Assembly: GCA_020137815.1 (NCBI GenBank)
Contig: CM035352.1
Span: 2,480,001-2,544,000 of the forward strand
DNA: 64,000 nt
Origin: Hormiphora californensis
Lineage: Eukaryota > Animalia > Ctenophora
Direction of reading: 5' to 3'
Within the stretch, counting starts at the first letter, position 1. Each line of letters begins with the position of its first letter. Under the pieces are notes generated by a model. The model was not told where the DNA came from. It saw nothing but the letters and a program-made list of their open reading frames with translations, and searched no databases. This document shows, in pieces, positions 36,655 to 40,227 of this stretch. The position numbers and the translations under genes were made by a program.

Positions 36655-37820
36655 TTTACTTTCGTTTCTTCATAGATAATGCTAGCAGCTAGGTAATGTC
36701 AAAAGTGAGAGTGGACAGAAAATAATTGGAGCATTTTTTTCTTTTTTCCAGTTTTTCTCCGCTCTCAAAAGACCAAATATTTTTTGTTACCGAAGTTGAT
36801 TTTTTTTAAATATGTCCGCCCAGTGTCCGCCTAGTGCCCACCCTCGATTTTTTATTTTTTATTTGGCACAATTTATCTGAGATATATCCGGTTCTTGGTT
36901 AGATAGGGGCTTAAAATTTGGAGGTTAAGAAGAACTCGATACATTCTTTTTGACCTACAAATTTGAAGTCTCTATCTTATCAGGGACTGAAGCTATGACC
37001 TGTTATGCAAAAAAGGGGGCAAAAAGTTTTAAAATCCGACTTTTTATGAGTCAAATTTTCTGGGCGCCGTTACGATCTGGGTGTTTGGAGGCCTGTTTAC
37101 AGGTGCGCGCTGCCAAAAAAGTTGATTCACTAAAATGGCTCTAACCGCCAAACCACTCAACCGTTTTGGCTGATTCAAAGTTTATCTGGTAGGGAATGTC
37201 AAGGCCTAACCCCAACCCAAACCCCAACCCTAACCCTAACCATACTTTAGCCCTAACCCTAAAAAACCGTTTGTCAGCACTCCCAAAACACCCAGATTTT
37301 AACGCTGGCCAAATTTTCTCTCTTATCTGTTTAAAAAAAGGTAAGGTCCTTAACGCGCGCGCAAAGCTCAGCCACGCGCAAAAAACGAAATAGAGACGCG
37401 CCGCGCTAAAGTGAGCCCTTAAAATAAAAAAATACAAAATCGGAAGCTCAAAACCCAGTGGGCCAGCGTTAAAATCTGGGTGTTTCGTGAGTGCTGACGG
37501 GCGCGATAAGGAACCATAATAAAGTTCAAGAGCCTCCAAGAGCGCACCCAATCCAAGAGAGACCAAAATCAAGAGCGCACCACAATCAAGAGAGACCAAA
37601 ATCAAGAGCACACCACAATCAAGAGAGACCAAAATCAAGAGCACACCACAATCAAGAGAGACCAAATCAAGAGCGCACTACAATCAAGAGAGGCCAAATT
37701 CAAGAGCGCACCACATCTGATATCTTCTGGACAGGGAGCTCTCTTGATTGTGGTGCGCTCTTGATTTGGTCTCTCTTGATTGTGGTGTGCTCTTGATTTG
37801 GTCTCTTTGGTCTCTTTGGT

Positions 37821-37854
37821 CTTTTCAACACTACTTTAAACAAATTAATTTGAG
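37821..37854 (+). other. Genomic copy of the ctenophore spliced leader exon at the 5' end of a retro-inserted transcript
   Basis: CTTTTCAACACTACTTTAAACAAATTAATTTGAG matches the Pleurobrachia SL as I recall it. It is followed by GC (no GT donor, so not an SL RNA gene), and an ATG lies 20 nt downstream. Confidence 0.8.
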
Positions 37855-37874
37855 GCGTGAGCCTCTAGGTAGTG

Positions 37875-38986
37875 ATGGGAACGAACGACAACGAGGGCGA
37901 TAACCCTACGAATGAACGATTGATAAAATCAGTGAATGACTATGTTTCGGAGATCATGAGATTGGAATACGCGGGAACCTCGGAAGAGATGAATGTTGAA
38001 CCTCAGCTGGTAACAGATAGCTACAACTTTTTCAAACATTTTCCTGAGTCAAAACTGACCCCTGATAGTGCTGGTACAGTTTATAAAGATATAAACACCT
38101 ATTTTAGACATTCTCTCAAGAACTTATCTAAAGAGGAAATAATTGACGCCACATGTAAAACGTTTTTGTCCAGTGAAACTTCTCAAATGTGCAATGCACA
38201 GCCTTGATGAGATTGTTAGTACGAGGAAACTCGAGGAGGAGTTACGAAAGTGCAAGGAAGAACTTGACCGCCACCGTGTCAATGTGATTGAGCTACAACA
38301 AACCGTTATTAACGCCCAAAAGGAGCAACTGAGTTCCGTAAAAACTTCAGTGCAGAAGGTGAAAGCCTACTCTACTGTACTGGCTCAAAACTGTGCCGCA
38401 GTCTCTCCGGTGGTGAGAAAGTCTTCTCAAGATCCTGCTTCCACACCATCGTCCGACAGGGAGAAAAACCTTGTTATTTTCGGTATACCAGAAACAACTG
38501 ACCGCCTGACTAGGAATAAAGTCCATTTTTTTTCAACTGTTCACCCAAAAACTGAAATTTAATAAAAATTAGAATTTCGGTGGCGCGCGCTATACGTTAA
38601 CATGTGATAAACGCGCAAAACAATTCCGCGCACGACTTTGGGGGGTGAACAGTTGAAAAAAAATGGAGTATAGTGTTGATGGTGTGTTTGCCGAGTTGAA
38701 CGAAAAACCAAAAGTTAACTCAATGAAACGTATCGGCGAGAGAAACGAGAAGGGCCCTCGGCCAATTTTGGTTTCTTTTGAAAGGCGAGCAACACTTTTG
38801 GCTCTGCTGAAAAAATCACGACAGCTCAAGAACTCGGAACATTTTTCAGCTGTTTACCTGTCACCTGATTTAACCCCGATTCAAATTAGAGAGCGAAAAA
38901 CTCTTATAAACACGATGAAAAAACTCCGCTTAGAAGACCCGAGTGGAAAGTACTATATTAAAAACAATATAATCCAAGTTGGATAA
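37875..38986 (+). pseudogene. LINE (CR1/L2-type) ORF1-like gene, intronless, disrupted by one frameshift (~38200) and a MITE
   Basis: A coiled coil is followed by REKNLVIFGIPE, KRIG...PRPILVSF and LKKSRQLK...VYLSPDLTPIQIRERK, which are typical ORF1 RRM/CTD motifs. Removing 38519-38670 plus one TA restores the frame (TRNSVDGVFAEL). Confidence 0.8.
38519..38670. mobile_element. 152-bp MITE with TA target-site duplication inside the ORF1-like gene
   Basis: TIRs TCCATTTTTTTTCAACTGTTCACCC / GGGTGAACAGTTGAAAAAAAATGGA, with TA at 38517-38518 and 38671-38672. Confidence 0.85.
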
Positions 38987-39198
38987 TATTTTTCTTATAC
39001 ACTGTTACTCTAGTTTAGTAAGCCCGCTTTAGGTAACTGCTGAAGCCTGTTGGCCTTTCAGCCTAAAAGCATACATATAATTTTATATGTATGTAAGTGT
39101 AAGAGCGGGTAGGGTCGTATATATTTTTAATCTATATTGACTCTGTTATAAATGTTGTAATTGATATTGATATTGATATTGGTGTGCTCTTCGCGGGC

Positions 39199-39517
39199 CA
39201 GGGCTGGCTCCAGCCCGATATTTCTGGGGGGGGGGGGGGGGTCCAGGGGGCGACGCCCCCGGAAATTTTTTAACTAAATCAAGCAAATTTTAGGGTTTTT
39301 AATCATTTGTGACGTCTACTTTCTAGATTTTTGAATGCCACAATGCTCTCTCTCTCTCTCTCAGTGATGTTCACTAGGTGATTTAAATTCGGTTGTGATC
39401 AGTCAAAAATTTTACTGAAAATTTTGTATTTTTGGGGTGGTTTCCCAATCCAAATGGTCTCAAGAATTTTTGGGGGGGGTGTGCACCCCCCCGCATCACC
39501 CCCCTGGAGCCAGCTTC
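39199..39517. mobile_element. MITE with GCTGGCTCCAG...CTGGAGCCAGC inverted ends
   Basis: Inverted termini and G/C-tract subterminal regions, flanked by similar CGCGG(G)CC sequences. Confidence 0.55.
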
Positions 39518-40227
39518 GCGCGGCCAGTGTAGGAGTGGCCGCGTCACCAAGGTGTGCTCTTGATTTTGGTCTCTCTTGATTGTGGTGTGCTCTTGATTTT
39601 GGTCTCTCTTGATTGTGGTGCGCTCTTGATTTTGGTCTCTCTTGGATGGGGTGCGCTCTTGGAGGCTCTTGAACTTTATTATGGTTCCTTATTATAATCT
39701 GGGTGCCTTGCGGCCTGTTTACAGGTGCACGCTACCAAAAGAGTACACTTAGACCGACTTTTTTGAAAAAAGTTTTTTTCAAACGGCTATAGCCACGCAA
39801 CCACATGTCCAATTTGAGTAAACTAAACGGTAACTGATAGAGAATCGATAGCCCTAACCGATAACCCCAAACCAAACCCTAACCAGACCCTAACGGATAG
39901 CCCTAACCCGTCACGCGCGCTAAAACAACGAATTGTTAGCAATGAAAGGCACCCAGATTTTAACGTTTTCCAAATTCCAGTGCTGACAAACGGTTTTTTA
40001 GGGTTAGGGCAAAAGTAGGGTTATGGTTAGGGTTGGGGTTTGAGTTGGGGTTAGGCCTTTCCTACCAGATAGACTTTGAATTAGCCAAAACGGTTGAGTG
40101 GTTTGGCGGTTGGAGCCATTTTACTTTTTAGTGAATCATTTTTTTGGCAGCGCGCACCTGTAAACAAGCCACCAAACACCCAGATCGTAACGGTGCCCCA
40201 AAACCCAGTCGTTTTTCTTTTTGTTTT

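What the first reader, a model, noticed from the sequence alone, without database searches (positions are those of the whole stretch)
37821..39180. Spliced-leader-capped, ORF1-only retroelement
Seen: a 1.36-kb insertion splits a foldback arm, with TTGGT on both sides. It starts exactly with a 34-nt SL-like exon, then a 20-nt UTR, an intronless LINE ORF1-like gene (~320 aa once repaired), a hairpin-rich 3' UTR and an (ATTGAT)n tail. There is no RT or endonuclease. Known: CR1/L2 LINEs end in short tandem tails rather than polyA, ORF1-only non-autonomous elements exist (HAL1), and SL relics mark retroposed mRNAs in dinoflagellates. The SL identity is from my recollection of the Pleurobrachia leader. 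Inference: a non-autonomous retroposon whose RNA is SL-trans-spliced, which defines its 5' end and cap without an internal promoter, and which is copied full-length by a partner LINE RT. I know of no description of such a system in ctenophores.
Basis: partly seen in the sequence, partly recalled or inferred. Interest (0 to 1): 0.92.

Follow-up and report, generated by a model that had tools for sequence, protein, structure and literature searches.

The report
Spliced-leader-headed ORF1-only retroposon copy
This is a dead copy of a recently active, about 1.2-kb comb-jelly retroposon whose DNA copies start with the host's trans-spliced leader, and about 97% of the leader sequences in this genome turn out to be such retroelement heads rather than leader genes.

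Summary
Window 37821-37854 is the last 34 nt of the published Hormiphora californensis spliced leader (SL). It is followed by a 20-nt UTR, a broken ORF, a structured 3' UTR and an (ATTGAT)n tail.

- **State of this copy.** It is dead: a 2-nt loss shifts the frame and a 151-bp MITE interrupts the ORF.
- **Family.** It is multicopy, 78-100% identical, with 5'-truncated members. Ten of 11 full copies keep an open ORF of 314 or 319 aa, with dN/dS 0.13-0.25.
- **Protein.** The ORF has no Pfam hit, but its model (coiled coil plus RRM) matches human L1 ORF1p best.
- **Leader added to the RNA.** Near-identical copies carry SL-A or a second leader, SL-B, joined at different AG acceptors.
- **Leader genes versus relics.** Only 16 SL-A genes and 1 SL-B gene exist, against 591 and 174 exon copies. 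Eleven of 30 sampled SL-A loci are ORF1-only elements, and SL-headed full LINEs also exist.
- **Partner LINE.** The sister subfamily shares 175 nt of 3' end and the (TGTAT)n tail with an APE+RT LINE. The window's subfamily shares only a 3' hairpin and the first 16 nt of its 5' UTR with another LINE.

No RNA evidence for this family was obtained. Two earlier first-reader notes describe the same kind elsewhere in this genome.

The parts
37821..37854 (+). Spliced-leader relic: the 3' 34 nt of SL-A. This is the 5' end of the retroposon.
   Evidence: Identical to the published leader. It is followed by GCGTGAGCC, not by the SL-gene intron GTAAGCTGAG. Nine genomic copies share this exact junction.
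37855..37874 (+). 20-nt 5' UTR containing two internal AG acceptors that other copies used.
   Evidence: L003, L004 and L016 join the leader after GGTAG, and L017 after CTCTAG. The first 16 nt are identical to the 5' UTR start of the full LINE L076.
37875..38986 (+). L1-ORF1p-like gene (coiled coil plus RRM), broken in this copy.
   Evidence: Read in three pieces. Natural intact copies encode 319 aa. AlphaFold model pLDDT 80; the top 11 Foldseek hits are human L1 ORF1p. dN/dS is 0.13-0.25.
38175..38176 (+). Frameshift site: two bases present in the other copies are absent here.
   Evidence: All four runs laid on the window show a 2-nt insertion behind 38175. ORF pieces change frame between 38143 and 38207.
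38519..38669 (.). 151-bp MITE inserted in the ORF, flanked by a 3-bp ATA duplication (38516-38518 and 38670-38672).
   Evidence: Absent from the other copies. Terminal inverted repeat I22. More than 25 copies at 97-99% identity genome-wide. Contigs skip 38516-38669.
38987..39159 (+). Structured 3' UTR: a closing stem AGCCCGCTTT...AGAGCGGGT enclosing two hairpins, then a GGGTC...GACTC hairpin.
   Evidence: MFE -48.2 kcal/mol, z = -2.7. The stems are conserved in subfamily A copies and in LINEs L076 and L062.
39160..39180 (+). (ATTGAT)n microsatellite tail, the 3' end of the retroposon.
   Evidence: The same tail is present in all subfamily A copies and in a marine metagenome relative, L078.
37506..37820 (.). 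Host foldback: left arm, loop and the start of the right arm, made of 33-bp tandem units. This is the insertion target.
   Evidence: Repeat families D1-D3 and inverted pairs I1, I3 and I6.
39181..39692 (.). Rest of the interrupted right arm, itself split by a second MITE-like insert of about 360 bp (39192-39550) flanked by GGTGTGCTCTT.

Best explanation
The stretch is one dead copy of a non-autonomous, LINE-dependent retroposon family about 1.2 kb long.

**What the element encodes.** It encodes only an RNA-binding, L1-ORF1p-like protein made of a coiled coil and an RRM.

**Proposed life cycle (shown).**
1. Its transcript receives the host spliced leader, SL-A or SL-B, by trans-splicing at an AG acceptor just upstream of the ORF.
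2. DNA copies carry the leader exon at their 5' end, a LINE-type 3' stem-loop and a microsatellite tail at their 3' end.

**Proposed life cycle (inferred).**
3. The capped RNA is bound by its own protein.
4. It is reverse-transcribed at a nicked target by the APE+RT protein of a LINE that recognises the 3' stem-loop and tail.
5. The cDNA usually runs to the leader's 5' end.
6. The integrated leader ends in ...TTTGAG, so a read-through transcript of any new copy can be trans-spliced at the same place again. The element would then need no promoter of its own.

The same leader capping applies to full autonomous LINEs and to many sister ORF1-only families in this genome.
For: **Leader identity.** It matches the published leader.

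**Real leader genes look different and are few.**
- They read exon|GTAAGCTGAG, with an Sm site and a conserved upstream box.
- There are 16 SL-A genes and 1 SL-B gene.
- Against these stand 591 SL-A and 174 SL-B exon copies.
- Relic length is 35-44 nt, mode 41-43, and never runs into the gene's upstream sequence.

**Signs of retroposition.**
- The family is dispersed, 78-100% identical, with 5'-truncated members.
- One copy sits inside another repeat whose empty form is known (L016).

**The leader is re-added to the RNA.**
- Four copies 99.7-100% identical in body carry four different heads: SL-A 34 nt, SL-A 39 nt, SL-A at an acceptor 17 nt downstream, and SL-B at that same acceptor.
- A sister family shows GAG|CAGGAAG against GAG|GAAG.
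- A metagenome relative has SL-B at the usual acceptor.

**The protein is under constraint and is ORF1p-like.**
- Ten of 11 full copies are open, with dN/dS 0.13-0.25.
- The fold matches L1 ORF1p, E about 1e-6, ranking above generic RRMs.

**Partner LINEs.**
- Subfamily B's last 175 nt are 84% identical to LINE L067/L075/L077 and carry the same (TGTAT)n tail. That LINE has APE+RT and, in L075 and L077, an SL-B head.
- Subfamily A shares a 3' stem-loop at 79-81% and the first 16 nt of the 5' UTR with LINE L076, which has an SL-B head and open ORF1 and ORF2.
- L066 is a full LINE with an SL-A head.
Against: - No RNA reads of this family were seen. The runs laid on the window were DNA contigs, apart from one seawater run whose RNA status is a guess.
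- No LINE with an (ATTGAT)n tail or a 3' UTR more than 81% identical was found. The closest LINE has a (CATTTT)n tail.
- The LINEs that share the element's ends encode unrelated ORF1s of CCHC or PHD type. The element is therefore not a simple ORF2 deletion.
- Target duplications are short and irregular.
- Re-use of the integrated leader's AG as the acceptor is untested.
- No tandem leader relics exist. This neither supports nor excludes recycling.
Confidence: 0.85

Rival explanations
1. The element targets leader genes, as NeSL-1, SLACS and CZAR do. On this reading it inserts into SL RNA genes, so the leader at its 5' end is the interrupted target and not part of the RNA.
For: Such LINE clades exist (established knowledge; cited in PMC4640811 and PMC3636483). 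The leader abuts the element exactly.
Against: - Upstream flanks are unrelated to one another and lack the conserved SL-gene box (GGGATGGGAGG...CCATCAG).
- No SL intron follows the tail.
- Relics are 5'-ragged at the RNA start.
- The break is always exactly the exon end or an AG within the UTR.
- The window copy sits in a foldback repeat.
- The partner enzymes are APE-type, not restriction-like.
Confidence: 0.02
2. The leader was captured once and is inherited as ordinary element sequence, for example as an internal promoter or a translation element. It would not be added afresh by trans-splicing each cycle.
For: Nine copies share one junction. Internal 5' promoters at LINE heads are known, for example Pr77 of L1Tc (PMC1874656, listed).
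Against: - Copies with virtually identical bodies differ in leader type and junction position, always at AG.
- The same two leaders head dozens of unrelated families and full LINEs.
- Leader ends coincide with the SL RNA 5' end.
Confidence: 0.06
3. The copies are chimeric retrocopies made by reverse-transcriptase template switching from the element RNA onto SL RNA, like U6-L1 chimeras, without any trans-splicing.
For: LINE reverse transcriptases do switch templates onto small nuclear RNAs (established knowledge).
Against: - Switching would copy SL RNA from its 3' end, intron part included. Only the exon is ever present.
- Junctions on the element side are all directly after AG.
- The leader sits on 56% of the species' Iso-Seq reads, so trans-splicing is the simpler source.
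Confidence: 0.03
4. It is a host multigene family of RRM proteins dispersed by occasional retroposition, and not a transposable element that depends on a LINE.
For: Strong purifying selection and many open copies. No Pfam transposon domain.
Against: - At least 125 scored copies from 612 candidates, in many subfamilies.
- LINE-type 3' ends and tails shared with LINEs.
- 5' truncations.
- Best fold match is L1 ORF1p.
- Identical recent copies at unrelated sites.
Confidence: 0.04

Closest known systems
HAL1 (half-L1) of mammals and HeT-A of Drosophila telomeres: retroposons encoding only ORF1/Gag that rely on the reverse transcriptase of another LINE
   Same: It has a single ORF1-type gene under selection and no RT or endonuclease. 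It is multicopy and has a LINE-like 3' end. The ORF1-only condition in Drosophila telomeric elements is discussed in PMC13534243. HAL1 is from my own knowledge.
   Different: - The 5' end is made by spliced-leader trans-splicing rather than by an internal promoter.
- The tail is a microsatellite rather than poly(A).
- The ORF is not the ORF1 of the LINE whose ends it shares.
- Subfamilies have swapped 3' modules: (ATTGAT)n against (TGTAT)n.
Spliced-leader relics on retroposed genes of dinoflagellates
   Same: The DNA copies begin with the leader exon, which marks an mRNA intermediate (PMC5585692 and PMC12014239).
   Different: Here the tagged RNAs are retroelements, both ORF1-only elements and whole LINEs, in an animal. 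No stacked or tandem relics are present.
Trans-spliced transposon transcripts in Hydra
   Same: About 30% of Hydra transposon Iso-Seq reads carry the host leader (PMC12220107). Transposon RNAs using host trans-splicing therefore has a precedent.
   Different: The passages I read from that paper report RNA only. Here the leader is fixed in hundreds of DNA copies at the element boundary.
Stringent-type LINE/SINE pairs that share a 3' stem-loop and short tandem tail (eel UnaL2/UnaSINE1; CR1/L2-like LINEs)
   Same: A conserved 3' stem-loop plus a short tandem-repeat tail is shared between the non-autonomous element and an APE+RT LINE.
   Different: The dependent element is protein-coding and leader-capped. 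The clade of the partner LINEs was not determined here.
Ribozyme-defined 5' ends of R2 and L1Tc (HDV-like ribozymes)
   Same: It is a device that cuts the element RNA out of a longer co-transcript and so removes the need for its own promoter (PMC3185411 and PMC3383444).
   Different: The device here would be the host's trans-splicing machinery acting at an AG acceptor, not a self-cleaving RNA. It also supplies a cap.

Membership tests
LINE-dependent non-autonomous retroposon | Dispersed multicopy family with 5'-truncated members and a common 3' end | tested here: met
   There are 6 full or near-full subfamily A copies, about 8 subfamily B copies, and at least 8 5'-truncated copies ending in the same tail.
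LINE-dependent non-autonomous retroposon | No reverse transcriptase or endonuclease of its own | tested here: met
   It has one ORF of 319 aa. None of 125 ORF matches lies next to any of the 150 scored RT matches (the comparison was made by eye).
LINE-dependent non-autonomous retroposon | 3' end shared with an autonomous LINE in the same genome | tested here: inconclusive
   Met for sister subfamily B: 175 nt at 84% identity plus the same (TGTAT)n tail in L067, L075 and L077. For the window's subfamily A, only about 100 nt of stem-loop at 79-81% is shared with L076 and L062, and their tail differs.
LINE-dependent non-autonomous retroposon | Target-site duplications flanking copies | tested here: inconclusive
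   Duplications range from 3-4 bp (L016) to about 12-17 bp with an indel (L003). The window's TTGGT lies in repeat DNA.
LINE-dependent non-autonomous retroposon | Mobilisation by the partner's enzyme | not testable with these tools
   This needs an experiment.
L1-type (type II) ORF1 protein | Sequence membership in Pfam Transposase_22 | tested here: not met
   No hit for the protein or for 47 homologues. No PDB sequence hit with a profile.
L1-type (type II) ORF1 protein | Architecture of a long coiled coil, then an RRM, then a C-terminal domain | tested here: met
   The model has helix 86-173 and a beta-alpha-beta-beta-alpha-beta unit at 199-280, then a helix and a hairpin. The top 11 PDB matches are human L1 ORF1p, including 2yko at 1e-6 and 2w7a with TM 0.67 on the RRM. 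The C-terminal part is shorter than in L1.
Spliced-leader-tagged retrocopy | The leader exon ends exactly at the junction, and the body begins after an AG acceptor | tested here: met
   All junction variants fall after AG in the longer form.
Spliced-leader-tagged retrocopy | Stacked or tandem leader relics from repeated recycling (dinoflagellate hallmark) | tested here: not met
   Zero matches to a leader end followed by a leader start.
SL-gene-targeting LINE (NeSL, SLACS, CZAR) | Insertion inside an SL RNA gene, with the gene's promoter upstream and its intron downstream | tested here: not met
   Flanks are unrelated to the 16 true SL-A genes.
Hammerhead-bearing retroelement (Penelope-like or retrozyme) | A hammerhead ribozyme recognised by a covariance model | tested here: not met
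   No Rfam hammerhead match at E up to 1 in the element or in the short leader-headed families that carry CTGATGA...GAAAC.

The most novel reading that the evidence does not exclude
In this ctenophore, trans-splicing may be a general way for retroelements to propagate. On this reading, LINEs and a large ctenophore-wide class of ORF1-only retroposons carry no promoter. Each integrated copy would bring its own trans-splice acceptor, namely the leader's ...TTTGAG end. Any read-through transcript, for example from a host intron, would then be cut out, capped and made translatable and retrotransposable again. About 97% of the SL-A exon copies in the genome would be the footprint of this cycle, and the published count of 718 'leader loci' is of the same order. 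Many 'nested intronic genes' and 'shared first exons' in the published annotation would be its by-products.
Probability: 0.45. Interest if true: 0.85.

Novelty: new variant of a known kind. Interest (0 to 1): 0.78.

Why it matters
- **A new way for retroelements to get a 5' end.** How a LINE or SINE secures a 5' end and a promoter after each jump is a classic problem. Known answers are internal promoters and 5' ribozymes. Use of the host's spliced-leader machinery, recorded in hundreds of DNA copies, would be a third answer, found here in an early-branching animal lineage.
- **A correction to the genome paper.** The 718 'leader sequences' reported for H. californensis are mostly not leader genes. 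I find 16 SL-A genes and 1 SL-B gene; the rest are retroelement heads. This bears on how Iso-Seq first exons were mapped.
- **A ready marker.** The leader relic marks full-length retrocopies and can be used to date bursts of retroposition.
- **A new protein family.** A ctenophore-wide, Pfam-less family of ORF1p-like proteins is defined.

Tried and rejected
- **Pfam and PDB sequence searches.** Neither the protein nor a 47-member profile gave a transposon hit. An interferon-gamma match at E 0.003 was treated as noise.
- **Rfam.** A scan of the element and of short leader-headed families gave only spurious miRNA-type hits on long palindromes and no hammerhead.
- **Tandem leader relics.** None found.
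- **Subfamily A partner among the best 3' UTR matches.** L063, L064 and L065 are just 5'-truncated copies with no LINE upstream.
- **Link between the ORF and the partners' ORF1.** tblastn and BLASTP of the ORF against LINEs L061, L062, L066, L067, L068 and L076 found no relation.
- **RNA evidence.** The look-up of sequencing runs and read laying gave only contigs, mostly DNA.
- **Derelle et al. 2010** is not held in the library.
- **Whole-genome loci.** Later regions were taken with the fetch from genomes.
- **No mended sequence.** No repaired or joined version of the window's broken ORF was made or searched. All protein work used a natural intact copy by reference (L002) or library proteins.

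Full report
**Identity of the genome and the leader**

The assembly (110.69 Mb, 45 contigs) fits the published Hormiphora californensis genome. That paper gives the trans-spliced leader as GAGTTTCAAACTTTTCAACACTACTTTAAACAAATTAATTTGAG. It reports the leader on 56% of Iso-Seq reads and counts 718 'leader sequences' in the genome (PMC8527503). Window 37821-37854 equals the last 34 nt of that leader. It occurs once in the window, against 0 expected by chance.

**Anatomy of the window copy**

| Part | Coordinates |
|---|---|
| Leader relic | 37821-37854 |
| 5' UTR (20 nt) | 37855-37874 |
| ORF, from ATG to stop | 37875-38986 |
| 3' UTR (z = -2.7) | 38987-39159 |
| (ATTGAT)3.5 tail | 39160-39180 |

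- The ORF is read in three pieces, for two reasons.
  - Two bases present in every other copy are missing after 38175.
  - A 151-bp MITE sits at 38519-38669. It has 3-bp ATA duplications and more than 25 near-identical copies elsewhere.
- The element interrupts the right arm of a foldback made of 33-bp units.
- A second MITE-like insert lies just downstream, at 39192-39550.
- The proposed TTGGT duplication cannot be judged in this repeat context.

**The family**

A genome search found two subfamilies that share leader, UTR and ORF (about 83% nt identity) but differ in their 3' modules.

| Subfamily | 3' UTR | Tail |
|---|---|---|
| A (window type) | as above | (ATTGAT)n |
| B | different, about 200 nt | (TGTAT)n |

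- Three other subfamily A copies are 99.7-100% identical to the window copy, and they lack both lesions.
- Older copies at 78-89% identity and at least 8 5'-truncated copies also exist.
- One subfamily B copy (L016) lies inside another repeat whose uninterrupted form is known. This gives clean boundaries at the leader and at the tail.
- Ten of 11 full-length copies have open ORFs of 319 or 314 aa. Pairwise dN/dS is 0.13-0.25.

**The protein**

- Pfam and PDB sequence searches are blank, both for the protein and for a 47-member profile.
- An AlphaFold model built on that alignment has pLDDT 80. It shows an 88-residue helix, a disordered linker, an RRM-like unit and a short helix plus hairpin.
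- The eleven best Foldseek matches in the PDB are all human LINE-1 ORF1p. Generic RRMs rank below them.
- The family has 1158 relatives in the 50% library.
- Where taxa are known, the nearest Atlas clusters are ctenophoran.
- In this genome there are at least 125 scored copies from 612 candidates, nearly all open. None lies next to a scored RT match.

**Real leader genes against relics**

- True SL-A genes read exon|GTAAGCTGAG, followed by a stem-loop, an Sm-like CTTTTGG and a terminal stem-loop. A conserved box lies upstream.
- There are 16 of them: a tandem cluster on C13 and divergent pairs on C5, C9 and C11, among others.
- The 34-mer occurs 591 times.
- None of 30 sampled SL-A loci on chromosome 1 is a leader gene:
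  - 11 are ORF1-only elements of this protein family. They fall into several families about 1.2 kb long, with (ATT)n, (AAT)n, (GAT)n or (ATGTTT)n tails.
  - About 10 are followed by other ORFs of 360-490 aa, some with PHD or CCCH matches. One of these (L060/L066) was confirmed as a full LINE.
  - 7 are short non-coding families.
- Relic lengths are 35-44 nt, mode 41-43, and never extend into the gene's upstream sequence.
- A second leader, SL-B, has one gene with the same architecture and 174 dispersed exon copies.

**The leader is added to the RNA each round**

Among the four virtually identical subfamily A copies, the heads differ:

| Copy | Head |
|---|---|
| Window | SL-A, 34 nt, at the usual junction |
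| L002 | SL-A, 39 nt, at the usual junction |
| L003 | SL-A, 41 nt, joined 17 nt downstream, after GGTAG |
| L004 | SL-B, joined at that same downstream site |

- Subfamily B adds L016 (SL-B at the downstream site) and L017 (SL-A after CTCTAG).
- A sister family shows GAG|CAGGAAG against GAG|GAAG.
- Every variant junction follows an AG.
- Marine metagenome contigs carry the same element types, including SL-B at the usual junction.

These facts exclude three alternatives:
- targeting of leader genes;
- template switching onto SL RNA;
- simple inheritance of a leader captured once.

**Partner LINEs**

- *Subfamily B.* Its last 175 nt are 84% identical to the 3' end of a LINE that carries the same (TGTAT)n tail (L061, L067, L075, L077).
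  - That LINE encodes an APE+RT ORF2 of 940 aa.
  - Its ORF1 region has PHD and CCHC motifs.
  - L075 and L077 carry an SL-B head.
- *Subfamily A.* No LINE has the same tail. The nearest are L076 and L062.
  - They share the 3' closing stem and hairpins at 79-81% identity.
  - L076 also shares the first 16 nt after the leader.
  - L076 is a full copy: SL-B, a CCHC-type ORF1 of 525 aa, an APE+RT ORF2 of 990 aa and a (CATTTT)n tail.
- L066 is a full LINE with an SL-A head.

The element is therefore not an ORF2 deletion of its partner. It is a separate ORF1p-like lineage that has taken LINE ends.

**Mechanism: what is shown and what is inferred**

Shown:
- the RNA origin of the copies;
- trans-splicing at AG acceptors;
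- selection on the protein;
- shared LINE 3' ends;
- recent activity.

Inferred:
- reverse transcription by the partner's enzyme through the 3' stem-loop;
- binding of the RNA by the element's own protein;
- re-use of the integrated leader's ...TTTGAG as the acceptor in read-through transcripts. This would make the copies independent of a promoter.

No leaderless source copy was found, and no tandem relics exist.

**Limits**

- No RNA reads of this family were obtained. The laid runs were contigs, three of them evidently genomic. One seawater run of uncertain type covers part of the ORF at low depth.

**Prior knowledge**

- The library holds leader relics on dinoflagellate retrogenes.
- It holds trans-spliced transposon transcripts in Hydra, at the RNA level.
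- It holds ribozyme- or promoter-defined LINE heads.
- It holds ORF1-only telomeric elements.
- I found no description of leader-headed LINEs or ORF1-only retroposons in ctenophores.
- Two unchecked first-reader notes report the same kind of element elsewhere in this genome.

Noticed in passing
window 38519-38669: A 151-bp MITE with terminal inverted repeats (A[G/C]TCCATTTTTTTTCAACTGTTCACCC) and a 3-bp ATA duplication. It has more than 25 copies at 97-99% identity across the genome, so it was active recently.
   Followed up: partly
window 39192-39550: A second MITE-like insert of about 360 bp in the same foldback arm. It is flanked by GGTGTGCTCTT on both sides and has inverted ends (GGCCAGGGCTGGCTCCAG / CTGGAGCCAGC) and long G and C runs.
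   Followed up: no
window 37062-37806 and 39551-40198: A large foldback whose arms hold 33-bp tandem units and telomere-like (CCCTAA/CCCCAA) stretches at 37208-37262 and 40022-40055.
   Followed up: no
L069 (C13:3189300-3195700); L070-L072; L081 (C13:2741050-2741450): The true SL RNA genes. There are 16 SL-A copies, in a roughly 750-bp tandem cluster on C13 plus divergent pairs and single copies elsewhere, and one SL-B gene. Each reads exon|GTAAGCTGA with a stem-loop, an Sm-like CTTTTGG and a terminal stem-loop.
   Followed up: yes
L033, L034, L042, L045, L052, L055, L057: Short non-coding leader-headed families of about 130-190 nt. Their body starts with CTGATGA or CTGAAGA, then a hairpin, then GAAAC, which is hammerhead-like. 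Several form head-to-head palindromes that meet at the leader 5' ends. No Rfam hammerhead match.
   Followed up: partly
L032/L043/L056, L048, L050, L053/L060 (first 40 nt after the leader): A conserved 5' UTR hairpin motif, AAC-N-GCCC-(4-5 nt)-GGGCAG, is shared by several otherwise different leader-headed families. Its function is unknown.
   Followed up: no
L066 (C1:7438400-7444800); L076 (C2:1464300-1470900): Full-length autonomous LINEs with open ORF1 and an APE+RT ORF2 that begin with SL-A or SL-B. Leader capping is therefore not confined to non-autonomous elements.
   Followed up: yes
L017 (C9:1670991-1674701) and C1:3080689-3080905: Leader-headed elements lie head-to-tail. The tail of one is followed within 40-90 nt by the leader of the next, which suggests insertion into or beside existing tails.
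   Followed up: no
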